The notes beneath the pieces are model-generated. The model was not told where the DNA came from. It saw only the letters and a list, made by a program, of their open reading frames with translations, and searched no databases. The position numbers and the translations under genes are program-made. A stretch of 64,000 nucleotides of DNA from Isurus oxyrinchus (lineage: Eukaryota). Shown one piece after another: positions 1,196 to 21,700 of this stretch (within the stretch, counting starts at the first letter, position 1; each line of letters opens with the position of its first letter). The stretch is taken from contig JANJGN010000042.1 of assembly GCA_026770705.1 (NCBI GenBank), positions 992,001-1,056,000 on the forward strand. Direction: 5' to 3'.

Positions 1196-1617
1196 TTCAC
1201 AATTAATACACCAACAGTTGTGCGACAATGATTATAAAGTCTCAGAGAGGTTTGCAACGACATTGCATGTGACGTGTGATCACATGGGCTGAATGTTGAT
1301 CAGGAGGGAGAAGTTTGCTGCGTTTTCCTTCAGGATTAGAATATTCAGTTTAGTTATAACTTGTTCTGAGACCAATAAATTCATCATAATCGGTTACAAC
1401 TAATCATTCCTCGTGTAGACTGCTCACTTTCGCAGTTGAAACTGTCTGCTGTTTAATTTTTCATTATTTTTACGAGGAATGTAACTGGGACTATACTATA
1501 CTCTCAGTTCTTCCCTGTGGACCTGGGTCTGTGCCCTTGAAAAACATTTCATTCCATCAAAACATAAACAATGTGTTTGTTTCAGTTAGTGTCATTAGTG
1601 AAAAAGATGAACTCGTC

Positions 1618-1652
1618 TAATTGTTTCCCTGGAGCCTGATATCAAGGATAAA
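1618..1652 (+). promoter_or_regulatory. Putative core promoter of GPCR paralog 1: homeodomain site + O/E(Ebf)-like site + degenerate TATA
   Basis: TAATTG 1618-1623, TTTCCCTGGAG 1624-1634, GATAAA 1647-1652 (57 nt before the ATG). The same module with the same spacing occurs in paralog 2. Confidence 0.55.
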
Positions 1653-1703
1653 TGTGACAATCTGTGAGTGCAGTGGAGAGCGCAACCGGAGTTTCTGATA
1701 GAA

Positions 1704-3946
1704 ATGCACTCATCACCAAAAGGTCTGCTGTTTGCCATTTACTATCCCTTCCTTGCAGCTATCGGAGTTCCAGGTAAAGAATTCCGGTTAACTATTAGTT
1801 ATAGAACTCATTGTTTAGCTCTGTGACTGTTATCATTTACAAATAATGCTTCTCCATCGGACCAATATCCTTTCTCCCATTTAAGCCAAATTATTCCAGT
1901 TAAATGATTTCTCCCATTTTGCAGTGCCATTTTTCAACCCTTTACCGTCATAGTATCTATACATTATCCATATAACTTGTCCTCAATAACAGTATATTAC
2001 TTTCACTTGACCAAGTAACATTTCATCCATTTAAGTTTATCCTTATTTACTGCAACCAACTCAAGGTGTAAATTTAATTGTTTTGTTGCTTCTGCTGTCA
2101 CTGTGGCTCCATTATCACACCGGTATCACAGTGAAAATTTGGTTCTATTGTGATTTGCCGCTGTCAAATCGCATGAGTTATCACACTGTAAATGTAGCTC
2201 TGTTGTTTTGTTGAAATGTTTACTGAATTATCACACTTTTACCCTGATGTGCATGTTGTTTCTTTTGCTGCAATATGAGTAATGGCCGTCTGTTAAAATT
2301 GTGTTGATTGTGTTCTACATTTTAATTAGACGGCGCCTCAATATATTTGCATAGCCAGCTTTTGACACACCAGCCACTCCTACAGCGCTTAAGTACTAGA
2401 GTAGAGCTTGAACCACAACCATCTGACTCAGGAGTGAGAATTCTGCTAAGTGAATCATGTTTTAAATATTGCCTGTATGTCCTTCTTTACTCGCAACCGT
2501 CAAGCTTTGTTACAATCTCTTCAATTAACTATCAATCAGCAGTCCCAGACTGTTCACTTTCCATGAAAACCAGCGTCCTTCCTTTAAATTAATAGCCGTT
2601 TCATGTATTGTGCACCCCAAGTGAAGCATTTTGCATTTCTCTGCATTGAATGTCATCTGCTGCCTTTATGACAAATTTCCTTAGTTTTAGTGTTTCTTGG
2701 ATTTGCTAAGGGCATGGTATTATCTTCTCTCATTTATACACGTTGAATGAGAGCATAAATGTTTGCATTTCCTGTAACTGAGTCAGGAAGTAGTGAGATG
2801 AATGCCCAATATAGAACTGAGCCCAGAATTAGCCCACAACTCAATACAGTGTTCTACGGAATGCTGCATTTTAGGAGGGATCTCTCTCTGAAGGAACAGG
2901 AAGGTCATCAACTGGAATTGCCAATTCTGGTCTCACTTCATATCTGCCTCCTGACTTCTGAGTATTTTCAGCTATTTCTCTTATATATTTGCTTCTGTAA
3001 GTTGCTTAATCAATGACTTTTTTGTCTATAATACAGCAAATTTGGCAGTGATTGTCATCCTGGGTCCGAGGAAGATGTGGGCTCTCCAGATGCATTACTT
3101 ACTACTTGGTATCCATGGCAGTGACAGATCTCCTGGTCATTGTAACAGCTGTGATATTAAACAGGATTGCCCGTATTTATTTCCCATTCAGCTTCCTCTC
3201 CATCATTCCAGTCTGTAGTCTCAGTTTTGTGCTAATTTATAGAGTCAGAGATTGCTCTGTCTGGGTAATTGTCGCTTTCACCTTCGATCGGTTTATGGCC
3301 ATTTGTTGCCAGAAGCGGAAAATAAAAAAACTGTACAGAGAAAACGGCGGCGGCGGTGATAGGAACTGTTTGTGTTCTATGCTGTTCTGTAAACACCCCC
3401 TGGTACTTTGTATATGAGCCTTCCTTTATCGTTAACAATACACCTTGGTTTTGTAATGCAAAATCCATATTTTACACATCGCCTATTTGGGCCGGATTTG
3501 ATTGGATTCTCATCATTTTAAGCCCCTGCCTCCCTTTCATTCTGATTTTACTGCTCAACCCTCTGACCGTCAGGCAAATTCTAGCAGCCAATCGATCCCG
3601 CAAGAGATTCCGGACCCACAGCAATGAAGAGAATCAGAGTGACCCGGAGATGGAGAAGTGGAAAAAGTCCATCATTTTGCTCATCTGTGTCTCGGCCAAT
3701 TTCATCCTGTTATATTCCTTATTTTTTATAACTATCTTCTACGTCAGAATTGCGAAGGTAACATATTCCTCAGGTTCTGATTCCAGTAACTCAACATTTA
3801 TTCTCGATGAAAGCGGAAATATGCTTCAGTTTTTGAGTTCCAGCATCAACCCATTTATTTATGCTGGGACCCAGAGTAAATTCAGAGAAGCGTTAAAGAA
3901 TAGGGTGAAATATCCCCTGACACTAATTGGCAAATTTTTTCATTAA
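1704..3946 (+). pseudogene. GPR139/GPR142-like class A GPCR, paralog 1 (exon 1 1704-1773, exon 2 3037-3946), two +1 frameshifts
   Basis: Exon 1 MHSSPKGLLFAIYYPFLAAIGVP, G|gtaaag donor at 1774, tacag acceptor ending 3036 (phase 1, giving ..GVP-ANL..). TM motifs YLVSMAVTDLLV, AFTFDRFMAICC, PCLPFILILLLN, NPFIY. Frameshifts at the G-run 3062-3064 and A7 run 3324-3330; no in-frame stops. Repaired length ~325 aa. Confidence 0.88.
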
Positions 3947-4299
3947 CCAAACCATTAAAGTCCAACATGATTTGGATCTTATAATCAATTCTTTTCTCTC
4001 TTTCTCCATGTCATGTACTGCCTCCCCTCCCAGCACCATTGTTACACGCTTAGAGATACATAGACTCTATATGAGGTAAGAATATGTAAGGAACGCTGCG
4101 CAGTTCAATTGTTCGTAAAATGTTACTTTTAAAATGTAATCAAGTCTGCAATTGGCAGTAAGTGGAAATTACTCTATATGTAGACTCTCTTTCTTGAAAG
4201 TTACACAGCTACTCACACTCCGATGTGAGTTCTGAGTAGTTAATTAGCTACCTTGTTGAATCTGGTAACTCTCACCCTAGTTCATTTGGTTATAAGTAC

Positions 4300-7200
4300 A
4301 GGGTTCCTTAGTGTAGCATTAGGAAACGGAGTGCAACTGTAGCAGTTGAGTGAAAACCTGAGAGCTTGGTGAGTGGGGTAATTCATTGAAGGAAGGGAAG
4401 TGGAGGGGTTCGGTTCCTTTTGTTTTATACCTGTCTGACAATGTAGAAACTCGTTCTCACCCTGTTGCAGGGAAAGGAGCCAGCTATCTTTTGAATATAT
4501 GTTAAATGGTTAAAGTAAATTCTATTCCTGAAGTTTAAAATAGAATACCAATTGGTGATAAACTTGATAACAATTTTTTTTAAAGTTTGAATGAAATAAT
4601 TCGTTAATTAATTTATACACATTATGGATGGCAGAGCAAGTGATGTTTCAAGGCTGCAGCATGTGGAAACTCCTGCATTCGAACTTTGGCTCAGGCTAAT
4701 TGTGCTGGTGGCTGAATTGCAGATGCTGTGAAGCATCGGGCAGGGGGGAATTTACCTGGATGCCTTGTCCCAGGAAGCATTCACATTACGAAGGATAGGG
4801 TCTATTGATTTAGGGTCTATTGATTTAGTCAGTGATCAGGGACAGGAGAGAGTGTTTCAGAGTGAGGAGGAAAGAGAAGCTAGGAGGAAGAAATGCAGGA
4901 GAATCAGCCTCTGTAATTACCCAAGAGGTTTGAGGTTCTCTCATCTTGTTTGGATGAGAAGAGAGTGGATGAGAAAACTGAGCATAGCGCCTTGGTGCAG
5001 GAAGCCATTCAAGTTGCTAGAGAATAAAATAATGTAGTGGTAGTAGGGAACAGTATAGTGAGGGCAATTGACACAGTTCTCTGCAGAAAAGAATGAGAGT
5101 CCAGACGACTGGTGCCAGTGTTTGGCACATCGGCTCAGGACTGGAGATGAACTAGCAGTGGAAGAGGCGTGGGCGTTGGGGGCAAATCCAGTTGACGTGT
5201 TCCATGTAGGTACCGACGACGTAGGTAGAAGCAGGAACAAAATTCTGCATTGAGAGTCTCAGGAGCTAGGCAGTAAATTAAAAAGCAGCAGCTCAAAGGT
5301 CTTAATCTCTGGATTATCCATCAAGGCTGGATGTTGCAAAGATAATAATACAAAACCAAAGGCTTTGCATCTATGTAACATTCGTAACAAGGTAACTGAT
5401 TCATCATGCATATTGAAGTAAATGCATACTATCTGATTGCTATTACAGGCGCGTGGCTGCAGGATGACAAGAATTGGGTCCTGAATATTGACATGCTCAT
5501 GGCATTCAAGAAGAGTGAGAAGTTAGGAAATGGTGGAGGGGTTGCACTGATGATCAAGGATGGCATTGGCGCAATTGTTAGTGATTACCTTGGTTCAGGA
5601 GATCAGGATGTGGAATCGGATTGCGTGGAGATGAAGAATAGTAACAGAAGAAGTCACTAGTGGGAGTGGTCTACAATCTTATAACGGTGACCACAATTTA
5701 AGACAAAATATACAAGAAGAAATGTTGTGTGCTTGTGATAAGGGGACAACAATAATCATGGTGAGTTTAAATAAATATAAATGGGAAAAATCTACCTGGC
5801 AGTAGTAGCTTGGATGAAGAGTTCACAGAATGCTTCTAAGGCAGTTTTTTTAAAGATGCACGTTCTGAAACCGACCAGAGAGCAATTGCATTAGACTGGG
5901 GTACAAGAAAAATACTGCAGAAGCTGGAAATCTGAAATAAATACAGAAAATGCTGGAAAAGCTCAGCAGGCCTGGCAGCATCTGTAGAGAGAGCAAGAGC
6001 GTTAAAGTTTTCAGTTTGTATGACTCTTCTCTGGCTCTGCAGAGGAGTCATTCATATTCGAAACTTTAACTCTTTTTCTAACTCCACAGATTCTGCAAGA
6101 CCTGCTGAGTTTTTCCAGCATTTTCTGCTTTTATTTAATATTAGATTTGATATTATGTAATGTGGCAGGATTAACAAAGGACTTCAGAGTTAAGGAATCC
6201 CTGTGTAGCATTGACCATAATTTGATTGACTTTTACATCCAGTTTGAAACTGAGAAGTTTGGGTCTAAGACTAGCATTTTAAAATGAAGCATGGGCAACG
6301 AGGTGGGCATGAAAGCTGAGCTAGCTGAAGTAAACTGGCATATCAGTATAAGGGATAGACAAGCATTGGAAGACATTTAAGGGGATACTTCAGAATACTC
6401 AGAATAAGTATATTCCTATGATGAAGAAAAATTCTAATGGGAGGACCTACCCATCCGTGGCTAAGTAAAAAAGTTAAGGGAAGCATCAAACTTAAGGAAA
6501 AAACATATCACTGCGCAAAGATGGGCAAATCAGCTGATTTGGTCAGAATATAAAGAATAGCAGAGACTGACTTAATTGTTAGTCAGGAAAAACAAATTAT
6601 AGAATGACAGGAAGCTAGCTAGAAATGTAAAGACGAACACCCCGCACCAAAAGTATTTAAGGTATTTGTGATGGAAAATAGTAAGTAAAGTGAGTGTTGG
6701 TCCTCCAGAGAATGAGGATGGCGAGTTAATAGTAGATAATAAGGAAATGGAGGATGGAATGAACAAATATTTTGCATCTGTCTTGGCTATAGAAGAATAA
6801 GTAAAATCATTGCAGTAAGAGCTGAAATCAGGAGGGAGAAGGGAGTGAGGAACTTGGTGAAATTGCAATCACTAACGAAGCGCTACTGAGCAAATTGGTG
6901 GAGCTGCAGGGTCCTCATGAACTTCATCCTATTGTCTTAAAAGAGATGGCTAATGAGGTACTGGATGCGTTGATGTTAGATTTCCAAAATTTCATAGATT
7001 CTGGAAAGGCTTAATCAGACTGGAAACACACAAATGTAAACCCTCTATTCAAGGGAGGGTTGCAGAAAACAGGAAACTATAGGCCAGTTAGCTTGACCTC
7101 TGTCGTTGGTAAGGCGCTAGAACCATTTATTAAAGGGGTTACAGTTGGGCACTTAGAAGAACTCAAGTTAACAGGGAAGAGTCAGGTTGGTTTTTGAAGG

Positions 7201-8470
7201 GCAGCCATGTTTAACCAATTTGTTATAGTTATTTGATGGACTAACGTGTGCTGTGGATAAAGGGGAACCTGTAGACTTTGTGTACTTGGGTTTCCAGAAG
7301 GCATTTGATAAGTTGCCACATCAAAGATTATTGTGGAAACAAGAAAAGCTCATGGTGTAGGGGGTAAAATATTAATCTGGATCCAAGATTGGCTGGCTGG
7401 CAGAAAACGGAGATTATGCATAAATTGGCCTTGGTCTGATTGGCAGGATGTGACTAGTGGGCCCCGCAAAGTTCTGTACTGTGGCCTTAACTTCGTACAA
7501 TTTACATCAATGACTTGGATTAGGGGAACGAAGGCATAGTATCGAAATGTACAGATGACACAAAGCTAGGCAGGAAACAATTTTGAAAATAAAAGATCAG
7601 CAGTTTGCAGAGGGACATAGGTAAGGTCAGTGAAGGGGCAGAAACCTGGCAGACGGAACATAATATGGGAAAATGTGAAGATGTTCACTTTGGCAGGAAG
7701 AATATGAAATCAAGTTATTACTTAACTAAGATCAGCTGCAGTATTCCAAGGCACAGAGGGATTTAGGTGTTCTAGTGCATGATTCACAGAAAATTAGTAT
7801 TCAGGTACATCAAGTAATTAAGAAAGCTAATAGAATGTTCTCCTTTACTTCAAGAGGAATTGATCATAAAAGTAAGGATGTTATGCTTCAATTATGCAGG
7901 ACATTGGTGACACCACATCTCGGAAACTGTGAAGTTTTGGTCTCCTTATTTATGTAAGGATGTAAATGCATTGGAGGCTGTTTAGATTATGTTTACCAGT
8001 TTGATAACTGGAAGGAGTGGGTTGTCTTATGAGAAGAGGTTGGGCAGGATGGGCTTGATTCCATTGGAGTTTAGAAGAGTGGCGGGTGATTTGATTGAAG
8101 TATACAAGATCCTGAATGAACTTGACAAGCTGGACGTGGAAATAATGTTCCCTCTTGTGCGTGAGTCCAGAACTAGGGGACACTGTTTTAAAATAAGTGT
8201 TCGCCCCTTTAGGACAGAGAAGAGCAGCATTTCCTTCGCTCAGATGGTAGTACAACTTTGGAACTCTGGATTGGAAGGCGATGGAGGTAGGGTCATTGAT
8301 TTTTTTTTAAGTAGGAGGTAGATAGTTTTTTTTAGACAAGAGAATCAAAGATTATCGGGGGCAGATGGGAATCTTGAATTCGAAACACAAACAGATCAGC
8401 CATGACCTTATCGATTGGCGGAGCTGTCTCGAGGGTCTGAATGCCTTCTCCTGCTCTTATTTGATACGTT
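4300..8470 (+). mobile_element. Near full-length decayed CR1 LINE (ORF1 zinc-finger/esterase, ORF2 APE endonuclease + RT)
   Basis: ORF1 remnants: CSMW near 4655 and VVVGNSIVR (GDSIVR-type esterase motif) near 5036. Endonuclease remnant GNGGGVALMIK. RT remnants AHGVGGKILIWIQDWL, LVTPHL, GLIPLEFRRVAGDLIEVYKILN. CR1-type 3' UTR ~8340-8470. Confidence 0.85.
5904..6139. mobile_element. Palindromic short element derived from the Penelope-like element 3' end, inserted in CR1
   Basis: Arm ~5936-6030 is the reverse complement of arm ~6041-6136. The right arm matches 17490-17588. Degenerate TSD attagactggggta (5890-5903) / attagatttgata (6140-6152). Confidence 0.75.
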
Positions 8471-9749
8471 GGCCTTTGGAGAAGGAGAGTCCGAATTGTA
8501 ATCTGCTATGGGGTTAACCGTTTAATAACGTAATACCAATATCCTTCTTGGGTAATATTTGGCCCTTGACGGTAGAATATACTTTGAAATGGAAATAAAT
8601 ATGGTCTTCACTCTTTGTTTCCTGTTCACGAGGCGTCATCCCACAGCCACGTTACTGTTTCAAAATACATGAAACAGGACTAGATAGTGGAGAAAAAATA
8701 AAACATTCGTTCAACTTTTATTCATTCAATTGGCCAATTGTGAGGAAATCCCCAGTGTCATCAACCGTTATCGAACGAATCCAAGAAAAGTTTCTCTTCT
8801 TTGGAAGGTTACAAATAATAAACAATCAAAACATAAAAAAGTTATCAAATGTAATGGTATTATTATCTTCACTGTCGGCTACGCTCTTAATTGTTTTTTT
8901 ATTTTGCAACCCTCATAACTGTGTAATGCAAGATCGATTACATTGCTGACTCGTCATAACAGTCTCCATCAATCATTTTACCCAGGTGCAAGGCAGGGCA
9001 ATTATCCCGAGCTCGAGACGTGTAGGAACCAGGGGCGCAAAATTAATCGGAAGGGTCCATTGGAGGCTGAGCATTGCTTTTACTTGGGCGCGATGAACAG
9101 CCAGCTTTTTCCTGTGTGGCCAGTCCAGCGTTACATGTATAGAAAGCGGAAAGCTGGCGTTCCATCTCCCTGCTCCGGGAGGCTTTGAATCGGTGTTTTC
9201 CTTTCGACACACAGTGATGCCAGCATTTTAAACTTGGACACGAGTGTCCAATTTAGGTTCATCTCTGTCTCTCTGAAATCTATAGGTGCGGAGATATAGA
9301 TTGGCCCCATAATGCGTGTGATGCCTGAATTGCAGGTGATGCAACTTTGTATAGTTTCTGCTTTTGCAAAGTGGCAAAACCTGGAGTATTTTTGGAGCAT
9401 CTGTGATGACTTTAGGAATTTCTCAGCGAGTTTTGTAGCAAACTCATAGGCCGTGCGGTGAGCATAGTGACTTGTCCACAAAGGTTGCAACAGATTTGGA
9501 GCTGAGGTTCCAGTGTATCTGGGTCTTCGGAACGGCAAGTGGGACGGAGAAGGAACTTCGGAGAAGGGAGTTTTGTGTCCAGACCGTTAGAAAATTGGAG
9601 ACAGACTGCTGAGTGACCCTTTACAATGTAAGAACATCAGTCGCTATCTTAGTCAATGAAGCCAATATCTTGGAATGCAAACAGCACTCCCCTATCTTCT
9701 GCTCCATTCCAATTACGACTCAACTGTGAACATTGGAGCAGGACTACAT

Positions 9750-10025
9750 CAGAACATGAGAATTAGGAGCAGGATTCAGCAATTTAGCACCTTGAGCCTG
9801 CCCCACCATGCGATACAATCATGGCTGATCTCATTTTGGCCTCAACTCCAATTTCCCGCCCTCTCCCTGTAAGCCTTCAACCCGTCACTAATTTAAATTT
9901 GTCTATCTCCTACTTAAATTTATTCAGCGTCCAGTCATCCACTGCACTCTGACGTAGTGTATTCTACAGGTTCACGGCCCTTTGAGAAAAATAATTCCAC
10001 TTCATTGCTGATTTAAATCTACCAA
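9750..10025 (-). mobile_element. CR1 3'-end fragment
   Basis: Reverse complement of the CR1 3' tail seen at 8200-8470 and 42105-42360 (e.g. aatcatggctgatctc, ctgtctatctc). Confidence 0.7.
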
Positions 10026-10911
10026 TTCTGGTGGAACACAGAGAGCAGAAAAGTGAATGGAACTTCAATGCCCATCAGCAAGAATGGCTCAATACCAATA
10101 TTGACTGAGCTGGCCAAGTCATGAAGGAGATATCTACCAGACCGGTCCCCCAGAAGGTGTTGAGAGAACACAAGGAGAAAACTTACTTGAGATGGAGCTC
10201 ATTACTCTACCTGGTACAGATCCATCTCCCACGTCAGTATTGGTGGTAGTGTCCACCGCACTTTCCTTTTGGATACAAAGACCTATCTTCAGACTGATGG
10301 CACCACCCATCGCGTTGTGTGGCTTAATCATCGTCCGTGATGAACTCAGAGCTATTAAGGACAATTGGCGATAGTTAGCATCACTTGCAATAACCTCAGT
10401 GTCCAAAATTCATCGGTCTCCGCTTGCAGGAGACAATTTTAACCAAACATGTGCTTTAATTTATGACTGTAAAATGTCTTAAAGTCCTTATCAGACACGT
10501 GAAACCAAGAAAAAAGGCTCATAAAATAAAACTGGCGGTAGAGTCTTCAGAATCTGGTTCTTGATGTCGGCCTGTTTAGAATGGTAGGAACAATATTTTA
10601 AAATTCAACACGCTACACCTACTGGATCTGCACGAACGAAGATGACGAGGTTGAAATAATGATTCTACTTTCATGTATCATTCTACAATGCTATTTAGTC
10701 ATCTGCTGAACCTGCAATTTTTCCTCAAATACTGCCCTTGCATTACACCAGCGAATACAGCTCAGAAGTGTTTCAGTAGTTCTAAAGCGTTTTTGGGGCA
10801 TCCTGGAGCATTGAACAGCGCTTTATAAACGCAAGTGTTTCTTTCTGTGAAAGAACAGAAAGTTGAAATTGTGAAACTTTGCTATAGTTATCAATCACTC
10901 GGAGTTGACGA

Positions 10912-11560
10912 CTGTGTGTGTACAAGTTTTGGTCTGCGCGGTGTGTGTGTTTATGTGTGGGTGTGCGTGTTTGTGTGCATAGGTGTTGTGTGTGCATGTG
11001 TGTCTTTGAGTGTACGTGCATTTCTGTATGTGTTTTGTGTGCTTATGTGTGTGTGTTGGGGGGTCGTAACGTGTCACGTGTGTTTGTGCATGTGCGTTTG
11101 TGTAGACATGTGTATGTTTTCGTGCGTCTGTGAATGTATCTGTTTGTGTGTGTGTGTTTTTGTTGTGTGTGTGTGTTTGTTTGCTTTGTGTGTGTGTGCT
11201 TATGTGTGTTTATTTCTGTGTGTGTGTGTTTGTGTGAGTATGTGTTGTGTGTGTATGGGCCTGCATTTATGTTTGCGTCCGTCTGTGAGTGTGTATGTTT
11301 GTTTGTGTATTTTGTATGTGTATGTGTATGTGTTTACCTGTAAGTGTGTGTCTGTGTATATATGTGCATGCGCGCCCGCACCACCTTTGTGTGTGTGTCT
11401 TGTGTGTGTGTGTATGTAAGCGTCCGTGTTATTTGTGTGCGTTTGTGAATTTGTCTTCTTGATTGTGTTTTGTGTGTGTTTGTTTTTTTGTGTTGTATAT
11501 CTGTATATGTTTCTTTGTGTTTGTGTGTGTGTGTGTTTGTGCGTGTGTGTGCTTCTTTGT
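10912..11560. repeat. Degenerate (GT)n microsatellite / low-complexity tract
   Basis: Directly visible tgtgtg-rich sequence over ~650 bp. Confidence 0.95.
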
Positions 11561-12284
11561 GCGCATCTGATTACGCCTTTCTGCTGTCCACCTCAGTCTC
11601 TCTCTCTCTCTAATGCTTATTCTCTCATTTGCTCTTTGTTTCCCTCCACTCGATCGATCACTCTCATGAAAGATCTACCGCTGTTGATGGTTAATTAACC
11701 CAGGATTGCTCCCTACACCATATTGCTCTGACACACCTCTAATAATTACATAGTCATGTCATGGATTGTTCAGCTTCAGTTCTACAATGGATAATTATTA
11801 GTTGTGATGTTAATTTTCCTGATGAACAAGATTATATTTTAAATAATGTTATAATACATCCGTATCCCTTGGTGTGGCTTCAGATAATCATGAGGAGATA
11901 AAACCAAAGGAGTAAATTTCGAAAAGGAGAATGCATATTTGTGATGTTTTATTTTAATAATCAGTGCAAAGTGCTGGAGAACTAATAAAGACAACTTAAT
12001 AAAGACTGAACTCACATTCCTCTCAAAACAGTAATGGTTTGTATTGCTGTTCAGTCACAAAATGAATAGTAAGTCAATGTTTTCTCAAAACAGTTTACAA
12101 AACAACAGTCTATAACACGCAGGAATGACTGGGGAGATTGACGCTCATGTCTATGGGATATAGAATGCTGACAGACACATAATAAAACCGGGTTATTTCC
12201 AATACAAGTCTGTAACTGGAGATATGTTTACATCCCTGTGTTCCCCTTTATCTGCAACGCATGTTGCTTCTTAAAAGAAAGCCA

Positions 12285-12460
12285 ATAAATTGGTCAGACA
12301 TGATTTCACACTCACAAAAATGCGCTGATTTTATCTAATTACCTTGAATTTGGCTCAGTGCCCTGCTACAACGCCTTTAATAATAGATTCTAACATTTTC
12401 CTATTACAGATGTTACACTAAATGGCCTGTAGATTCGTTTTTTACTGACAACTTTCCTTT
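12285..12460 (-). mobile_element. CR1 RT fragment
   Basis: Reverse complement matches the CR1 'NYRPVSLTSVVGK..SQHGF..SCLTN' region (compare 7075-7220). Confidence 0.6.
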
Positions 12461-14341
12461 TTAACGTTGTGGATCACCCGTGGCTTCACAGGTGAGAGGA
12501 AGTATTTCAATGACTCGTGGGTAGGTGGGGATCGACTCACCTCTCAATTATCTGTGTAACAAGGGAATTCTTACTCAGGAGAAGCAGTTTAGCTGTTCTG
12601 CCCTTGAGAATGGATAACTCAGTTATTCTGCCTGCTGTTACATCGTTGAGTTCACAAAAGACTGATGATCAGCTGTCATTGCTGCTGTTAATCTTCTTCA
12701 CGCCTGAGCCGTACTCATTCTGGCAGTTAGACTGTGCTTCTGCAAATTTTAATGACCCCAATAATTGTTTTCAGATTGTAATGCACAAAACTGTGGGGAT
12801 ATAACGAAAACATATGGCGGGAGGCTGGAGGGTGGGGACACGCTAAAGGTCTAAATGGAGTGTGCCACTCTAAAATAATTGGAAAATGAAATATATGTTT
12901 GCTGATAGACATTGTGATTAGGTGATTCTGGGAATTAGAAGTCAGAAACGATGATTCCAAGAGTAACCCATTTCATCCAGTAGTTCTGCATGTCTCTCAT
13001 TTTACATCTAAAATGTGCATGACATCGTCGGAGAGCAGAATGCTTGAGAACAACTCAGTGGTGCAACACACTTCCCAGTCCACGGATCGAAACCAGCAGC
13101 CCGGCAGCACTGGGGGCATTTTCCAATGGGCAGTGGACAAACTGGTTCTTCGCGGGCATAGGAAAGTCAGGTACTGAGCACACTTAAGCCAACAGAGCTA
13201 TTACAAAGTGTCACCCGCTCTCAGGCAACTTCGGGTTTGACATCGAAGCAACTTCATATCGTAGGGCCTTCAAAAGCTTTCCCCAGCACAGCTGAAACTG
13301 TGATGTATGCGGGGATTTATAATACACATATGTACAAAACTGCCTCTTTTAATTTGCTCTATGAATGTGAGGATTTTACAGGAACACCGTCCAGAATTTA
13401 TTCACAGCAGCCACACCATAAACAGGCATAATAGGACGATAAGGCATATCAATGCGTGGTGAAAAGATGGTGCAGGAGGGAGGGCTTTAGTTTGCTGGGG
13501 CACAAGGACTGGCTCTGGTGGAGTTGGCACCAGGACAAACCGGCTGGTTGCATCTGAAAAGACCGAGAATAGGTTCCTTGGGAGGGTTTGAAACTAACTC
13601 GGCCGGGATGTTGAACCAGGGGAGAGTATTAATGAGGAATATCAGGGTGCACAAAATACTTGGAGACATATATAACGCCATAAAAGTGATTAATAAGTTA
13701 GTAGGTGGGGTTTCTGTGAGGGAGAAAATAACAAATTCTAAATCATGTTTACTATACATGTATGTGAATGCGCGATGTACAGTCAATACAACTGGGGAAT
13801 TACAGACGCAGGTTGCCAGGTGCAAATATGATCTTTTGGCGACAGCAGAAACCTGGCTCAAGGAAGTGCAGAACTGGGTGTTAAACATTTCTGGTACAAG
13901 GTATTCAGAAAAGTTAGGTAAGGAAGGAAAGGAGGAGGTTGGCTTTATTGTTTAAGGAGACCGTTGCAGTGCTGGAGAAAGAGGATGTCCCACAGTGTCC
14001 AAGGACAGAATCAATTTGGCTAGAGCTAAGGAGCAAAAGAGTGCGATTACATTGCTTGGTGTACTCCATAGGCAGCCAGCTAGTGAGGAAGGCGTAGAAT
14101 GACAAATCCTCAGGGATAATATGGAGGTTTGCAAGCATTATAGAGTAGTTTTAATGAGGGACTTCACTCACCCGAATGGAGACTGAGACAGTGGCAGTGT
14201 AAACGTTGGAGAAGGGCAAATGTTGCTAGATTGTGTTCAGGAAAGAATTACTACAGTAGTATGTGTCCAATCCAACAAGAAAAGAAGCAATTTTTTTGTT
14301 TTTATCTCTGTGTTTAATTGACTGCCACTGCTCTTCAAGAA

Positions 14342-17085
14342 ATGCCTACCTCCTTGAAGAAGTTCTGTCCGTCTCTGCGACAAGATTTCTGTATCTCTCT
14401 TTTGCCCTGCTCACATTCATTGCTTTCCATTTCTCTCCTGGTGTTTGACAAGGTGTTTACTAAAAGCCGCTTTCACAGCCATATCTCCTTTCTCAGTGAC
14501 TGTCTCCATCTCCGACTTACCCCACGTGGATTTCAACTGAAATTCCACCCCTCATGTTTCGAACCCACCCAGGATTACAGGTATCTCCGGGACATAAAAC
14601 GTTTCTCGGACTGCTGTCTCCGTCACATTCTGAGATCCACACTCAGTGCCATGCGCCACCATATGAACACACTCGACCTCTCCCTCCAGCAGCACCGCCG
14701 TACCCTTTTTCAAAGCAGCGCATGCCCCCAGTTTCAGTTTACTGTTCGGCTTATCCGACGCCTCAACAAGAAACTTTTTCTCTTTCTCTCAAGTGCTAAG
14801 GAACGCAAGCTCCAACAACTCATCGACACCAACACCCATCTAGGACCCTCCACCCCTGCCTGTCCCTCCGACCCCACCCCATCTTCTAATCCCATCCCCA
14901 GCCGTGTATTCACTATACCCCCTGACCTTCCCCTCTCCGATGCTGAACGTTCAGTGCTCAGCAAAGGACTTAGTTTCATACCCTTACGCCCTCACCTCAA
15001 TGAATTTCGGGCTTGGCATGATGCTGAACTCTTCGTCCGCCGTCTTCGTCTCCGGGCTCACATCTTTGGGCAGAGGTCCTCTCCCAGTTCAATGGATCCT
15101 TTCACCCACCTCCAATATTGTCCCTCCAACTGGACCCCTCCCTTTGGATTCTTACCTTCTCTTGATCTTTTCATTGAGAACTGTCGGTGCGACATGAGTC
15201 ATCTCAATTTCTCTGCTCTTCTCACTCATTCTCATCTCTCTCTCTGAACTGACTGCACTCCGTTCTCTCAGGTCCAACCCTGACATTGTCATCAAACCCG
15301 CTGACTAGGGTGGTGCTGTTGTTGTCTGGTGCACTGACCTCTACCTCGCAGAGGCTGAGCGTCAATTCGCAGATGCTTCCTCCTACCTCTCCCTGCACCA
15401 TGACCCCGCCACTGAACATCAAATCATTGTTTCCAGGACTGTCACTGACCTCATCTCCTCTGGGAATCTTCCACCCACAGCTTGCAACCTGATAATCGCC
15501 CAACCTCGGATGGCCCACTTCTATCTCCTACCCAAAATCCACAAACAGAACTGCCCCGGTAGACTGATCATGTCAGCTTGCTCCTGCCCCACAGAACTCA
15601 TTTCTCGTTATCTTGACTCCCTTCTCTCTCCCCCTGTCCAGTCCCCTCCCACATACATCCGTGATTCCTCTGACACCTTACGTCACATCAACAATTTCCA
15701 GTTCCCTGGCTCCAACTGCTTCCTCTTCACCATGGACCTCCAATCCGTCTACACCTCCATCCCCCACCAGGATGGTCTGAGGGCCCTTAGCTTCTTCTTT
15801 GAACAGAGGCCCAAACAATCCCCATCCACCACTACTCTCCTCCGTCTGGCTGAACTCGTTCTCATGCTGAACAATTTCTCCTTCAACTCCTCTCACTTCT
15901 TCTAAATAAAAGGTGTGGCTATGGGTACCCGCATGGGCCCCAGCTATGCCTGTCTCTTTATGGGGTATGTGGAACATTCCTTGTTCCAGTCCTACTCCAG
16001 CCCCCTTCCACAACTCTTTCTCTGGTACATCGATGATTACTTTGGTGCTGCTTCATGCTCTCGTTGAGACTTGGAAAAAATTATTAATTTTGCTTCCAAT
16101 CTCCATCCCTCCATCATTTTCACGTGGTCCATCTCTGACACTTCCCTTCCCTTCCTTGACCTCTCTGTCTCAATCTCTGGTGATAGACTGTCCACCAATA
16201 TCCATTACAAACCCACCGACTCCCACAGCTACCTCGACTATCGCTCCTCACACCCCGCTTCCTGTTAGGACTCCATACAATTCTCTCAGTTCCTTCACCT
16301 CCGTCGCATCTGTTCTGATGATGCTACCTTCAAAAACAGTTTCTCTGACAAGTCCTCCTTCTTCCTTAACCGACGTTTTGCACCCATGGTCGTTGACAGG
16401 GCCCTCAACCCTGCCCGGCCCATCTCCCACACATCTGCCCTCACGCCTTCTCCTCCCTCCCAGAAACATGATAGGGTCCCCCTTGTCCTCACCTATCACC
16501 CCACCAGCCTCCACATTCAAAGGATCATCCTCTGCCATTTCTACCAACTCCAGCATGATACCACCACCAAACACATCTTCACTTCACCCCCCCATCGGTA
16601 TTCCACATGTATCATTCCCTCCGGGGCACCCTGGTCCACTCCTCCATCACCCCCTACTCCTCATCCCCCTCCTATGGCACCACCCCATGCCCACGCAAAA
16701 GATGTAACACCTGCCCCTTCACTTACTCTCTCCTCACCGTCCAAGGGCCCAAACACTCCTTTCAAGTGAAGCAGCATTTCACTTTCATTTCCCCCAACTT
16801 AGTCGACTGCATTCGTTGCTTCCAATGTGGTCTCCCCTACATTGGAGAGACCAAACGTAAACTGGGCGACCGCTTTGCAGAACACCTGTAGACTGTCAGC
16901 AAGAATGACCCAAACTTCCCTGTCGTAACACTCCACCCTGCTCTCTTGCCCACATGTCTGTCCTTGGCTTGCTGCATTGTTCCAGTGAAGCCCAACGCAA
17001 ACTGGAGGAACAACACCTCATCTTCCGACTAGGCACTTTGCAGCCTTCCGGACTGAACATTGAATTCAACAACTTTAGGTCGTGA
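14342..17085 (+). pseudogene. Disrupted Penelope-like RT/GIY-YIG polyprotein ORF
   Basis: ATG 14342 (MPTSLKK) to TGA 17083-17085 (QPSGLNIEFNNFRS*). Broken by a frameshift near 15240, stops near 15306, 15903, 16266 and 16889, and further frameshifts. Confidence 0.85.
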
Positions 17086-17487
17086 GCTCCCTCCCCCATC
17101 CGCACCCCCTTTCTGTTTCCCCCTTGCTTTTGTTTTTTCCAATAAATTATATAGATTTTTCTTTTCCAACCTATTTCCATTATTTTTAAATATTTTTAAA
17201 TCTTTTATACACCTCCACCCCCACTAGAGCTATACCTTGAGTGCCCTACCATCCTTTCTTAATTAGCACATTCGTTTAGATAATATCACCAACATTAACA
17301 CCTATGTGTTCTTTTGTTCTGTTGTTTGTGACACCTTTTGATGATCTGCTTCTATTACTGCCTGTCTGTCCCTACAACCGCACCAAACAGCTCCACTTCT
17401 CTTTCTCTTCCCCCACCCAATCCACACCCCCCCCCCCCAACACACCTTAAACCAGCTTATATTTCACCCCTTTCGTGGACTCACTCA

Positions 17488-17526
17488 AGTTCTGTCGAAG
17501 GGTCATGAGGACTCGAAACATCAAAT
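17488..17526 (+). ncRNA. Degenerate minimal hammerhead ribozyme motif at the Penelope 3' end
   Basis: agtt-CTGTCGA(17492-17498)-A-GGGTC-atgag-GACTC-GAAA-C-ATC-aaat. The core differs from CUGANGA at one position; stem II is 5 bp. Confidence 0.55.
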
Positions 17527-19742
17527 CTTTTCTTCTCCGCTGATGCTGCCAGACCTGCTGAGTTTTTCCAGGTAATTTTGTTTTTGTTAAGAAAAGAAGC
17601 ACTGTTGGACCTGTTTCCTGGAAATGAGGTGGGCCAAGTAGATCCAGTGTCAGTGGGGGAACACTTAGGATACAGTGATCATTGTATTGTAAATTTTAGG
17701 ATGATGAAAGAAAATGACGACAGACAATCCAGAGTAAGAATATTTAGCCGCCATCGATGGGGCATTTAGGGAGCTGTGCCAGAGAGGCTGGAAGGAAAGA
17801 TTGACGGGGAAAGAAGAAACTGGAGTGGAACAATGATTTAACTTCAAAAAATAATTAGTTCACGCACAGTCAAGGTGTATCCCAATGAAACGGAAAGGTG
17901 AAACGAACAAACCCAGAGCTCCCTAGATGTATAAAGAGATAACATTTACGTTGAAGTAGAAAATATATGCTTATGACAGGTCGAACATACAATTGAGAAA
18001 CAACAGGAATAGAGGAGATTCAGGGGGGAGGTGAAGAAAACAGAGTAGAAAAACGAAGAGGGGTTACCAGAAAAGGCTGGCAGCCAACACAAAGGGGAGT
18101 CACTAAGTCTTCTCTGGGCCTGAACATAGTGAAAGGGTATAAACGGAGGAGTTGGACCGATTTGCGAGTGAAAAAGGAATTTACACATGTCTGAGGTATT
18201 ATGTGAACAATTTGCATTCATCTTGACCCAGTTGTTAGAAGCAATCAAGGCCTTGGTGACAGAAAAGGAAACGCTGCCACTTGAACTGTTCTAATTGATA
18301 AGGGAAGTGCTGCATAGAATGTCGATACTTAAAGCTGTCAAGGTGCCAGGACACAATGAGATGCGTCCAAGGATATTGAACGAAGCGAAATTGGAAACTG
18401 CAGGGGCACTGACCATAAATTTTCAGTCTTCCCTTGAATCAGGGGGTGGGGGGGAGGTCTGTGGTGGTGGGGGGGGGACGGTGTCGGGGGGGGGTGGGGA
18501 GGGGGCGGGCGCGGGGGCTGGTGGTGCCAGAAAGACTGGAGAATTGCAAACATTACGTCCTTATTCAAAAATGGTTGTAAGGGTAAACCCAGCGAATAAA
18601 GGCCAGTCAGATCAACATGGTGGTGGGCAAGATTGTAGAATCAAATATTCGGGGTAGAATTAGCAGCTGCCTGGAAAAGTATGGGTTGATAAGGAAAAGT
18701 CAGCATCGAGTTCTTAAGGGGAAATCGTATTTAACTAACTTGTGGAGTTGTTTGAAGAGGTAGCAGAAAAGGTCGATGGGGGTAATGCTCTTGATGTGGT
18801 GTACATGGACTTTCAAAAATCATTCGATACGCTGCTAAACATCAGAATTGTGAGAAAATTAACTGCTCATATAATAATGGAGACATTGCAAAATGGATAC
18901 AAAATTGGCTGAACAATAAGCAGCAGAGAGTAATGGTCAATGGACATTTTCCGGGCTGGAATGGTCTACAACTGCTCCAATACTCCATTGTTCATGTCTT
19001 CCAATGCAATTAATGCTAAGTTATCTGTAGGCAATATAAAACGTTCTCCTTAAAACATTCAAAGTTAATCAAGAACATGAACATACAATCTCGCAAGGCG
19101 ATTCGGGAGGCCCTGTACAAGTTGGCTGCCGAGATCTCTTTATAAACAATTCTCAAGGCGCAGGTTGGAGCTTAGGGTGTCTTCCCATCCGCATGATTTA
19201 ATGTTTAAAAGCATGCAAACACTTTTCAAAATATTTTGAAATGTGTAAACCAATTGCAAAGTCTTGAAAAATACCTTTATTGTGTTTAGATGTATTTAAG
19301 GTTATAATAAAAGACGCAACAGCTTTTGAGCTGAATAGTGACCGCAAGACAAGTGTCTGGGGTTCGTTACCTCTTAAGAGGGCGCGATTTCGCCATGACT
19401 TCGGCCCTCTGTTGGTCTACGTCAATGTTTTACTCTGTGGGCCCTACAACAACCTAAGGTTGAAATCTTCGTGTCAGCCGATGAAGAAGGCAAATTTGCA
19501 GACAGCGTGGTCATTCGCAAACATGGCTGCTTTGACTCGGATGCAAAATGTCCAGTCCGTTTTTTGTTTAGAAAAACTTGCAGCTGGAATCATGCTGTAG
19601 CCTCTGGGCATTTTAGTTCAGAGCCTAGTCAGATTCCATGAAAAAAAATTGAATTGATCAACACATTAACAGCCGAGAAGCAGCTGCATTAATCTGTTTA
19701 TTACAAAAAAAGGTAATAAATTTTTAGGTAGATCAAACCATT

Positions 19743-19777
19743 TAATTATTTCCCTGGAGACTGAGATTAGGTATAAA
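19743..19777 (+). promoter_or_regulatory. Putative core promoter of GPCR paralog 2: homeodomain site + O/E(Ebf)-like site + TATA box
   Basis: TAATTA 19743-19748, TTTCCCTGGAG 19749-19759, TATAAA 19772-19777 (58 nt before the ATG). The 17-bp module is 16/17 identical to paralog 1. Confidence 0.6.
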
Positions 19778-21059
19778 GGTGAGATTTCTTACAATGTAAG
19801 GTAGAACTTGCTCAGAGTTCCTAATCGGAATGCACGTCTCACCAAAAAGCCTGTTGTTTGCCATTTACTATCCTGTCCTTGCTGCTATCGGGATTCCGGG
19901 TAAAATTTTGTTGTTATTTCGTAGTTTTGTGAATCATTGTTTAGATACATTATTCCTTCAATTTTAACAGTAGGGTGTCTACACGGTCCTGAAATCCGTT
20001 CTCCCATCTAATGGTAAATAATTTTCACATTGACTGATATAAATTCATTACATTAGCTGACACCATTTCTCCACCATTTTTCCTCTACAACTGTATCATT
20101 TCTCCATGTTAACGGTGCGATTTCTTTTATTGACACAGTTACTCGAAATTGATGGTTAAGTATCTCTCTCTTAGCAATGTGATGCTTTCCTCTTTGCTCG
20201 CATCGATCATTCACTTTAAAACTTCTCTTCCTTAATTATATGCTGACTTCCTAAAGCTGGACCCATTTAATCGGTTTAATTATACAGTTCATCCCATTTA
20301 CCACCATCATCTTACGATGTCATTGTACTTTAGCTGTGTTGCTGTCACTATTACTTTACGTGCCTTATCCTAATGTTGTCACGATGTAAAATGTGCTGTT
20401 AATAATGTCATTGTTCTGTTAACAATGCTGTTATGGGTGAATGACCGCAATGTCAAAATGGTGCAAATGCAGTTTTATTGTGTCACTTGGAAGGGTCCCT
20501 GGGTATATTTTCAGTCTGTTAACACAGTGTATATGCACTCCTGTTTTATTCACGCCTTCACTTCGAGAGAATTATCACACTGTTGTCACAATGTCCATGT
20601 TCATCTATTTAATTATTGCCACTGTTAATTTGATTGAATTATCATATTACAGTCACTATGCAACTCGACACATATTGGGATTGACAATGATGGGGGTAAT
20701 TAGCAGAAGTGAGATATTATTGAAATAATTGTCCCATTTAGCAATTTCTGATTGAATTTAATTAATTTATATATTCTGCAATAGCTTATTAGTGTTCGAT
20801 GCATTGATAAATATACATGTAATGTAAAAATAGCACTTTGATGAATGATTGAATTTGTCTCAGTCGCACAAAGCAGTGTTTTTGGTTCTCAGTTTCTGAC
20901 ATTCGCTGCTTCAGCCCTGCACTCTTCTTCCGCATTAGCTCCTGCTAGTGGCTGTACATTTCTGAGTGCTGAATCTGGGACTCCCTTCTGCTCCGAGCAG
21001 CAGGCAATATCCCGGAACATTCCCATCTTCATTTTCACGGCCAGACTGACTTAGGACAC

Positions 21060-21350
21060 AAACTGGTCACATCTTTCTCATCTAAGGCACAGAGATTTGA
21101 TTTCAAGTAGCCACGAAAGCCCAAAAATAATCATTTTTCATCGATGGTCTAGTGCAACCCTCAGGAAGTGCTACATTGTAGGAGTGTCTTTTTGTTGCAA
21201 ATGGGACCTCATTCTCTCGCACTCTCAGTGGTTTGAATCGCACCAGAAGATTCTGGGTGATTATTAGCAGAAAAAGCCATGCTTAGCTCTGTGTATACCC
21301 ATTATTTCCTCTGCAAAGTCAGAGAAACGCTGATTGTTCGGTCTCTCTTC
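21060..21350 (+). mobile_element. Decayed Deu-domain-like SINE fragment in the GPCR intron
   Basis: Resembles the reverse complement of 27170-27585 and 40040-40865. Confidence 0.4.
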
Positions 21351-21596
21351 TGAGGTTGATTTTATTTTTGATCACGTTGCCTGTCTCCTTTTATCCAAAG
21401 GATCAGTTTTAGAGCAATTCATTGGATGTGACAACTGTTGACCATCCGTGAGTTGTGGTTCGATGTATTATTCGTTTCCACAACTGTTGTTGGTTGTCCT
21501 TTTTTGTCCACGTATTTATTTGCCAGTGTGTTATTTTCTTACGCATTCGTTAGTCTTGTACTGGTTTTGTTGTGTTTCGATGATTACTTATTTCTC

Positions 21597-21700
21597 AAAT
21601 AAAATAGAGAATGCTAACAAATCTCAACAGGCCTGGCAGCATCTTTGGAAAGAGAAATAGAGTTAATATTTCGAGGCTGAATGGCTCTTCATCAGAGCAG
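21597..21700 (-). mobile_element. Penelope 3'-end fragment with hammerhead motif (in GPCR paralog 2 intron, antisense)
   Basis: Same sequence as the left arms of 5904-6139 and 56028-56247. Minus strand reads CTGATGA-A-GAGCC-attca-GCCTC-GAAA-T-ATT-aact. Confidence 0.7.

What the first reader, a model, noticed from the sequence alone, without database searches (positions are those of the whole stretch)
1618..19777. Olfactory-receptor-style HD + O/E(Ebf) + TATA promoter module conserved in both GPR139-like paralogs
Seen: TAATT(G/A)TTTCCCTGGAG (1618-1634; 19743-19759) is 16/17 identical between paralogs, while the surrounding non-coding DNA has visibly diverged. In both it lies exactly 12 nt before a TATA-position motif, which is 57-58 nt before the ATG. 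An extra TAATGA lies on the minus strand at 1592-1597. Established: adjacent homeodomain (Lhx2/Emx2, TAATNN) and O/E (Ebf/Olf-1, TCCCNNG(G/A)G-type) sites are the hallmark of mammalian odorant-receptor promoters and enhancers. Inference: these genes may be driven in olfactory sensory neurons. EBF1 use in B cells is an alternative, given the IgNAR neighbour.
Basis: partly seen in the sequence, partly recalled or inferred. Interest (0 to 1): 0.8.

Follow-up and report, generated by a model that had tools for sequence, protein, structure and literature searches.

The report
Conserved promoter of shark orphan receptors
Two old copies of a receptor gene from a family that has expanded greatly in sharks share a short promoter block that resembles the switches of mammalian smell-receptor genes, but nothing I could test shows that the genes are used in the nose.

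Summary
TAATTGTTTCCCTGGAG (1618-1634) and TAATTATTTCCCTGGAG (19743-19759) lie 12 nt before a TATA-type box, which is 57 or 58 nt before the ATG of two 2-exon class-A GPCR genes.

The block is the core of a 40-nt stretch (33/40 identical). Weaker conserved patches reach about -170. The introns and flanks show no detectable similarity, and the genes are old duplicates (dS about 0.6, dN/dS about 0.3). It is most likely a real, constrained proximal promoter.

Reading it as a homeodomain site plus an O/E (Ebf) site fits, but it is not proven:
- The O/E half matches 7/8 (gene B) and 6/8 (gene A) of the specified positions of TCCCNNGGGA.
- In mouse, directly juxtaposed HD/O-E sites mark OR enhancers, not OR promoters.
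- No RNA run was available. The reads laid were DNA of a relative about 3% diverged.
- Published catshark work reports no ciliated olfactory neurons.

Both window copies carry frameshifts in short homopolymer runs. Other read sets lack the gene B frameshift. Gene A has an intact 94%-identical ortholog in the great white shark.

The parts
1535..1590 (+). Gene A: weaker conserved upstream promoter patches, including the forkhead-like TGTTTGTTT
   Evidence: MAFFT alignment with 19640-19712 of gene B. About 75% identity in patches. No transcription factor was tested.
1592..1597 (-). Gene A: distal TAATGA homeodomain-type core, 20 nt before the proximal one
   Evidence: Sequence. It aligns with TAATAA on the + strand of gene B. 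In AT-rich DNA this is not beyond chance.
1618..1623 (+). Gene A: proximal homeodomain-type core TAATTG
   Evidence: Conserved as TAATTA in gene B.
1626..1634 (+). Gene A: O/E(Ebf)-like element TCCCTGGAG(C). It matches 6/8 specified positions of TCCCNNGGGA.
   Evidence: Identical 9-mer in gene B.
1647..1653 (+). Gene A: degenerate TATA-position motif GATAAAT, 57 nt before the ATG
   Evidence: It aligns base for base with TATAAAG of gene B.
1704..1773 (+). Gene A exon 1 (MHSSPKGLLFAIYYPFLAAIGVP, phase-1 donor GTAAAG)
   Evidence: It matches the N-terminus of intact family members.
3037..3946 (+). Gene A exon 2, with two +1 frameshifts. One is in the G run at 3062-3064; the other is in or beside the A run at 3320-3330.
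   Evidence: The pieces are 94% identical to the intact Carcharodon protein P0080. Pfam 7tm_1.
19640..19712 (+). Gene B: weaker conserved upstream promoter patches, including the forkhead-like TGTTTATT
19714..19719 (+). Gene B: distal TAATAA core, 23 nt before the proximal one
19743..19748 (+). Gene B: proximal homeodomain-type core TAATTA
19751..19759 (+). Gene B: O/E(Ebf)-like element TCCCTGGAG(A). It matches 7/8 specified positions of TCCCNNGGGA.
19772..19777 (+). Gene B: canonical TATAAA, 58 nt before the ATG
19830..19899 (+). Gene B exon 1 (MHVSPKSLLFAIYYPVLAAIGIP, phase-1 donor GTAAAA)
21955..22858 (+). Gene B exon 2, with one frameshift in the A run at 22298-22302 (A5 here). It also has a 6-nt in-frame deletion behind 21960 relative to other read sets.
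   Evidence: Contigs of runs X9 and X11 carry an extra A behind 22297, which restores VKNTFLHFVYEP. Runs X1, X2 and X11 carry TGGCAG behind 21960.

Best explanation
The 17-mer is the core of a truly conserved proximal promoter of a large orphan class-A GPCR family that has expanded in sharks. NCBI names most members 'probable GPR139'.

The layout is rigid: a TAATTR homeodomain-type core, 2 nt, TTTCCCTGGAG (an imperfect COE/Ebf-type site), 12 nt, a TATA box, then roughly 30 nt to an inferred start site and a short leader to the ATG in a 70-nt first exon.

What is shown:
- the sequences and their spacing;
- their conservation across an old duplication, while the introns and flanks show no detectable similarity;
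- purifying selection on the coding sequence.

What is inferred:
- the block binds a homeodomain protein and a second factor that together place and activate TBP-dependent initiation in one cell type;
- the second factor is an Ebf-family protein. This is the best motif-level fit, but I give it only about one chance in three;
- the cell type is an olfactory sensory neuron. I give this about one chance in six.
For: - Exact motifs and spacing.
- blastn between the two loci finds only three regions. They are exon 2 (77%), exon 1 with the proximal leader (83.5%), and the promoter block 1618-1657 / 19743-19782 (33/40). Nothing is found in the 1.3-2.1 kb introns or the flanks.
- None of 3,000 comparisons with unrelated segments reaches 16/17 or even 27/40.
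- The duplication is old and the genes were constrained: dS 0.62, dN/dS 0.29.
- Gene A has an intact 94%-identical ortholog in Carcharodon, so the A/B split predates that speciation.
- The family is very large in sharks: 733 protein clusters at E<1e-5 across at least 11 shark species.
- Its variability sits at the outer ends of TM3-TM7 and in ECL2/ECL3.
- The promoters are AT-rich: 36-38% GC against 43% for the window.
- Earlier notes of this scan report the same HD-2-O/E-11/12-TATA layout at other paralog clusters of this genome. These are leads that I did not verify.
- The motifs fit the literature: COE consensus TCCCNNGGGA (PMC4312928), and O/E + HD + TATA enrichment in mouse OR promoters (PMC3247239).
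Against: - Only two sequences could be compared. Under an indel-free neutral model at 61% identity, the joint chance of 16/17 and 33/40 is about 6%.
- The Ebf half-site is imperfect (GAG in place of GGG).
- The same bases also read as Ikaros/NFAT-like GGGAAA on the other strand or as a STAT-like TTCNNNGRA. These alternatives come from my own knowledge of consensus sites and were not tested.
- There is no transcript evidence for the start site or the tissue.
- Both window copies carry frameshifts, so in this genome the promoters may sit on dead genes.
- Catshark studies found no ciliated OSNs, no OR expression in OSNs, and no GPCR among the top olfactory/brain-specific genes (PMC10116579, PMC11979771).
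Confidence: 0.7

Rival explanations
1. Olfactory reading. Lhx2/Emx2-type and Ebf-type factors bind the block and drive the family in olfactory sensory neurons. The family would then be an unrecognised shark chemoreceptor repertoire.
For: - An HD core and an O/E-like element sit side by side, with a TATA box in an AT-rich promoter. This is the mouse OR cis-vocabulary (PMC3247239, PMC12547500).
- Both 17-mers fit 16 of 17 positions of the composite pattern used in PMC11643329, in the register TAAT(1-4)/TCCC(9-12).
- The family is huge, arranged in tandem, and variable at pocket-facing positions.
- Sharks have few classical olfactory receptors (PMC10869828).
Against: - That composite pattern is uninformative: it has 113 exact and 1,238 one-off matches in this window alone.
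- Composite motifs are depleted from mouse OR promoters (PMC5608512, PMC11643329).
- No RNA evidence was obtainable.
- The catshark nose lacks ciliated OSNs and does not express ORs in OSNs (PMC10116579).
- The top 50 olfactory/brain-specific catshark genes include no GPCR (PMC11979771).
Confidence: 0.17
2. It is a conserved promoter, but for a non-olfactory tissue such as brain, another sensory organ, lymphoid cells or gonad. It would use a homeodomain factor plus some other factor: Ebf1 in B cells, or an Ikaros-, NFAT- or STAT-like factor.
For: - TAATTR cores are bound by dozens of homeodomain proteins.
- The second element is only a partial Ebf site.
- Young et al. note that Ikaros matrices co-score with O/E sites (PMC3247239).
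- Earlier scan notes report that family members lie among Ig/TCR loci in this genome, and IgNAR lies in this window.
- The nearest solved relatives are peptide receptors: TRHR, GPR139, GALR2, PrRPR.
Against: - Lying next to immune loci is not evidence of co-expression.
- Hundreds of rapidly diversifying paralogs are unusual for an endocrine or neuropeptide receptor.
Confidence: 0.45
3. There is no constraint. The block is a chance island of residual similarity, or a product of local gene conversion, in the 5' region of two decaying copies.
For: - Under indel-free drift at 61% identity, 16/17 occurs in 17% of simulations and 33/40 in 10%.
- Both copies have frameshifts.
Against: - The introns and flanks keep no detectable similarity.
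- The block keeps the same distance to the TATA box and the ATG.
- The leader between the TATA box and -16 has diverged while patches on both sides are kept, which is not the pattern gene conversion leaves.
- Other clusters are reported to carry the same layout (unverified).
- The gene B frameshift is absent from other read sets, and gene A has an intact ortholog.
Confidence: 0.08

Closest known systems
Mouse odorant-receptor proximal promoters (O/E + homeodomain sites, often with a TATA box)
   Same: - AT-rich, with no CpG island.
- An HD-type TAAT core and an O/E-like TCCC..G.G element lie within 100 nt of the inferred start site.
- There is a TATA box at about -30.
- It belongs to a large tandem class-A GPCR family.
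   Different: - In mouse the HD and O/E sites are scattered within about 200 bp and are not juxtaposed. Here they are 2 nt apart and at a fixed 12 nt from the TATA box.
- The receptor family is unrelated to ORs.
- Binding and olfactory expression are unknown.
- The coding region is split by an intron after codon 23. The single coding exon of mammalian ORs is stated from my own knowledge.
Greek Island Lhx2/Ebf composite motif of OR enhancers (Monahan 2017; Pulupa 2024)
   Same: - An HD site and an O/E site sit side by side with rigid spacing.
- The shark 17-mers fit 16/17 positions of the published degenerate search pattern.
   Different: - The mouse composite sits in intergenic enhancers and is depleted from promoters. 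Here it lies next to a TATA box.
- Position 7 of the pattern is not met.
- The pattern is far too degenerate to count as a test.
EBF1-dependent B-lineage promoters
   Same: They share a TCCCNNGGGA-type element. In this window the genes have an antibody-gene neighbour.
   Different: - B-cell EBF1 sites are not typically paired with a homeodomain core (my own knowledge).
- No expression data.
- The site here departs from the palindrome.
GPR139/GPR142 receptors
   Same: They are rhodopsin-class receptors. NCBI pipelines name most family members 'probable GPR139'.
   Different: An intact family member (P0002) scores no better against GPR139 (E 2e-8) than against TRHR (E 9.6e-9) or GALR2 (E 7.4e-8). 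The family is a separate, shark-expanded lineage with hundreds of members, not an ortholog.

Membership tests
OR-type promoter (mouse definition) | Homeodomain (TAATNN) site within about 200 bp upstream of the TSS | tested here: met
   TAATTG at 1618-1623 and TAATTA at 19743-19748, about 55-60 nt upstream of the inferred TSS. The TSS itself is inferred from the TATA box, not measured.
OR-type promoter (mouse definition) | O/E (Olf/Ebf) site matching TCCCNNGGGA near the TSS | tested here: inconclusive
   TCCCTGGAGA in gene B (7/8 specified positions) and TCCCTGGAGC in gene A (6/8). Loose TCCCNNGRG sites occur 12 times in the window by chance. With two sequences, the constraint on the NN spacer cannot be judged.
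OR-type promoter (mouse definition) | AT-rich, CpG-island-free promoter, often with a TATA box at -60 to -10 | tested here: met
   GC is 38% (gene A) and 36% (gene B) against 43% for the window. TATAAA at 19772 and GATAAAT at 1647.
OR-type promoter (mouse definition) | Bound by Lhx2/Emx2 and Ebf; drives expression in olfactory sensory neurons | not testable with these tools
   No run on record as RNA holds the locus. The laid runs were DNA contigs.
Greek Island composite Lhx2/Ebf motif | HD and O/E sites juxtaposed at the stereotyped spacing (the Fuzznuc pattern in PMC11643329) | tested here: inconclusive
   Both 17-mers fit 16/17 positions, missing position 7. The pattern has 113 exact and 1,238 one-off matches in this 64-kb window.
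Greek Island composite Lhx2/Ebf motif | Located in intergenic enhancers; depleted from receptor promoters | tested here: not met
   The block lies 12 nt upstream of the TATA box and 86-87 nt upstream of the ATG.
Rhodopsin-class GPCR (Pfam 7tm_1) | Significant match to PF00001 across the seven-helix core | tested here: met
   All four exon-2 pieces match PF00001, with E from 2.8e-11 to 1.9e-6. The pieces were searched separately; the joined spliced model was not searched.
GPR139/GPR142 subfamily | Closest similarity is to GPR139 rather than to other class-A receptors | tested here: not met
   P0002 against PDB sequences gives TRHR 9.6e-9, GPR139 2e-8, GALR2 7.4e-8. For the window pieces the top hits are TAAR13, orexin and TRHR.

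The most novel reading that the evidence does not exclude
The block is a promoter-embedded version of the Lhx2/Ebf composite site. It would drive a shark-specific family of several hundred class-A receptors in olfactory neurons, or in another Ebf-positive sensory neuron type. That would supply the 'missing' chemoreceptor repertoire of elasmobranchs. It would also show that the HD+O/E receptor-choice grammar predates, or arose independently of, bony-vertebrate OR regulation.
Probability: 0.15. Interest if true: 0.85.

Novelty: new variant of a known kind. Interest (0 to 1): 0.45.

Why it matters

A family of hundreds of rapidly diversifying class-A receptors that is absent from the papers I could search is worth attention in its own right. 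If its promoter used the same two-factor vocabulary as mammalian OR genes, the family would be a directly testable candidate for a new chemoreceptor class. It would also inform how receptor-gene choice evolved.

If the genes are expressed elsewhere, the rigid promoter still gives a clean handle for finding the cell type and the regulators of a large orphan receptor family.

Tried and rejected
- **Exon-1-anchored degenerate pattern** (MH..FAIYYP). I scanned metagenome contigs and genome contigs. Both returned only AT-rich microbial chance matches and no shark DNA.
- **Expression.**
  - The look-up of sequencing runs listed no run on record as RNA.
  - Read laying on 18300-23900 with four runs gave contigs over intron and flanks at about 3% difference and no exon1-exon2 joint. 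These are DNA of a relative or divergent individuals, so they carry no information on transcription.
- **Catshark atlas supplements.** None are held as text.
- **Literature on the family.** Searches for GPR139 with shark terms found nothing relevant.
- **Further copies in the window.** tblastn with P0002 finds only the two genes.
- **Published composite-motif pattern as a test.** Rejected as uninformative.
- **Mouse 'extended homeodomain' site.** Gene A resembles AACTTTTTAATGA (PMC7804114) on the minus strand at about 1588-1605. It needs a 3-nt insertion to fit and is not conserved in gene B, so I rejected it.
- **Upstream non-coding exon.** Gene A has TTTCTGATAG just before the ATG, which could be a splice acceptor. 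Gene B has no AG there, so I rejected this.
- **Joined spliced model.** The joined protein model (exon 1 + exon 2) was not searched in any tool; the pieces were searched separately.


Full report
**1. The observation.**

In both, 12 nt separate the block from a TATA-position motif. This is GATAAAT at 1647 in gene A and a canonical TATAAA at 19772 in gene B. The ATG follows 57 and 58 nt after the start of that motif, at 1704 and 19830. The minus-strand TAATGA at 1592-1597 is also real.

The 9-mer TCCCTGGAG occurs nowhere else in the window on either strand. A search for the 17-mer allowing three mismatches finds only these two sites.

**2. The genes.**

Each block precedes a two-exon gene.
- Exon 1 is 70 nt, at 1704-1773 and 19830-19899. 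It encodes MH.SPK.LLFAIYYP.LAAIG.P and ends in a phase-1 GTAAA donor.
- Exon 2 starts at 3037 and 21955 and ends at the stops at 3946 and 22858.

The exon-2 pieces match Pfam 7tm_1. I searched the pieces separately and did not search a joined spliced model.

A protein search with the C-terminal piece of gene B returned 733 protein clusters at E<1e-5.
- Among the 120 best hits listed, nearly all are from sharks: Heterodontus, Rhincodon, Stegostoma, Scyliorhinus, Carcharodon, Heptranchias, Pristiophorus, Mustelus, Hemiscyllium and Chiloscyllium.
- Most are named 'probable G-protein coupled receptor 139' by NCBI.
- Intact members are 325-326 aa and start MHGSPKGLVFAIYYP.

The name is nominal. An intact member scores about equally, and weakly, against TRHR, GPR139 and GALR2.

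Across 81 full-length members, variability is concentrated at the outer ends of TM3, TM4, TM5, TM6 and TM7 and in ECL2/ECL3. The cytoplasmic parts are nearly invariant. This fits diversifying ligand recognition but does not prove it.

I found no paper describing this expansion.

**3. State of the two copies.**

Compared with the family, gene A has two +1 shifts. One is in a G run at 3062-3064. The other is in or beside an A run near 3320-3330. Gene B has one shift in the A run at 22298-22302.

All three lie in short homopolymers.
- Contigs of two independent read sets carry one more A behind 22297. This restores the frame as ...CVKNTFLHFVYEP. These read sets differ from the window by about 3%, so they come from a relative or from divergent individuals.
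- The pieces of gene A are 94% identical to an intact great white shark protein, P0080.

The copies are therefore either very recent pseudogenes or victims of homopolymer assembly errors.

**4. Is the block conserved beyond chance?**

blastn of the two loci finds only three regions:
- exon 2 at 77% identity;
- exon 1 with the last 15 nt of leader, at 83.5%;
- the promoter block 1618-1657 against 19743-19782, at 33/40.

Nothing aligns in the 1.3-kb and 2.1-kb introns or in the flanks. MAFFT adds weaker patches back to about -170, including a forkhead-like TGTTTRTT.

The duplication is old: dS 0.62, 61% identity at four-fold sites, dN/dS 0.29. It predates the split from the white shark lineage.

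Two nulls give different answers.
- Against unrelated window segments, no pair out of 3,000 reaches 16/17 or exceeds 26/40.
- If the promoter had drifted without indels at 61% identity, a 16/17 run somewhere in 250 nt would appear 17% of the time. A 33/40 run would appear 10% of the time, and both together 6%.

The two-sequence evidence is therefore good but not overwhelming. What lifts it is the total loss of detectable similarity in the truly non-coding DNA, the fixed distances to the TATA box and the ATG, and the contrast with the leader. The leader at 1658-1688 has diverged to 1-3 matches per 10 nt.

Earlier notes of this scan report the same HD-2-O/E-11/12-TATA layout at other paralog clusters of this genome. 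I could not read those sequences, so they remain leads.

**5. What the block is.**

Motif-level fits:
- TAATTR is a generic homeodomain core.
- TCCCTGGAG(A/C) matches 7/8 (gene B) and 6/8 (gene A) of the specified positions of the COE/Ebf palindrome TCCCNNGGGA (PMC4312928, PMC2394523).
- Mouse OR promoters are enriched for O/E and HD sites within 200 bp of the start site, and about 39% have a TATA box (PMC3247239).

In mouse, however, the direct juxtaposition of the two sites defines the 'composite' motif of the Greek Island enhancers. It is reported as depleted from OR promoters (PMC5608512, PMC11643329, PMC12547500).

The shark 17-mers fit 16 of 17 positions of the degenerate pattern used to scan for that composite, missing position 7. 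That pattern has 113 exact and 1,238 one-off matches in this window, so the fit carries no weight.

With two sequences I cannot ask the decisive question: whether the two central O/E bases are free while TCCC and G.G are fixed.

**6. Expression.**

No run on record as RNA holds the locus. The four runs I laid gave contigs across intron and flanks and no exon1-exon2 joint. They say nothing about transcription.

Published work lowers the prior somewhat.
- The catshark olfactory epithelium appears to contain only microvillous TRPC2/Go-positive neurons, and ORs are not expressed in them (PMC10116579).
- The 50 most specific 'brain & olfactory epithelium' catshark genes include no GPCR (PMC11979771).

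Sparsely expressed receptors would not be expected in such a list, so this is weak evidence.

**7. Verdict.**

The block is most likely a real, constrained proximal promoter module of an undescribed, shark-expanded orphan GPCR family (confidence about 0.7).

The HD+O/E reading is the best available motif-level label, but it is unproven. The olfactory inference has no direct support (about 0.15-0.2). A non-olfactory use of the same promoter is at least as likely.

The scan had already found this module on other DNA of the same genome, with the same limitation.

Noticed in passing
window 22298-22302 and 21960: Gene B's only frameshift is an A5 run. Contigs of runs X9 and X11 have A6, which restores the reading frame. 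Runs X1, X2 and X11 also carry a 6-nt insertion, TGGCAG, behind 21960. This gives the family-consensus ANLAVIVIL instead of the window's ANLIVIL.
   Followed up: partly
window 3062-3064 and about 3320-3330: Both frameshifts of gene A are +1 changes in or beside homopolymer runs (G3, A7). The flanking pieces are 94% identical to an intact Carcharodon carcharias protein (P0080). A homopolymer assembly error is a live alternative to pseudogenisation.
   Followed up: partly
window 18300-23900 (read sets X1, X2, X9, X11): All public read sets that hold this locus differ from the window by about 3% in the intron (for example 72 differences in 2,261 nt). The promoter/exon-1 piece 19715-19946 shows 4 differences in 232 nt. 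None of the runs looks like the assembled individual.
   Followed up: no
window 18300-19050 and 21479-21670: Contig depths in the thousands and many alternative joints point to interspersed repeats. One lies just upstream of gene B and one inside its intron.
   Followed up: no
window 10835-11419: A 194-aa 'ORF' made almost only of C, V, L and M codons. It is a TG-rich simple repeat, not a gene.
   Followed up: no
window 51500-51970: An ORF with a reverse-transcriptase domain (PF00078, E 8.7e-12): a retroelement fragment. The ORFs at 14318-15247 and 15913-16707 have no Pfam match.
   Followed up: partly
window 1571-1586 / 19690-19705: A forkhead-type TGTTTRTT motif is conserved between the two promoters, about 35-50 nt upstream of the HD/O-E block.
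   Followed up: no
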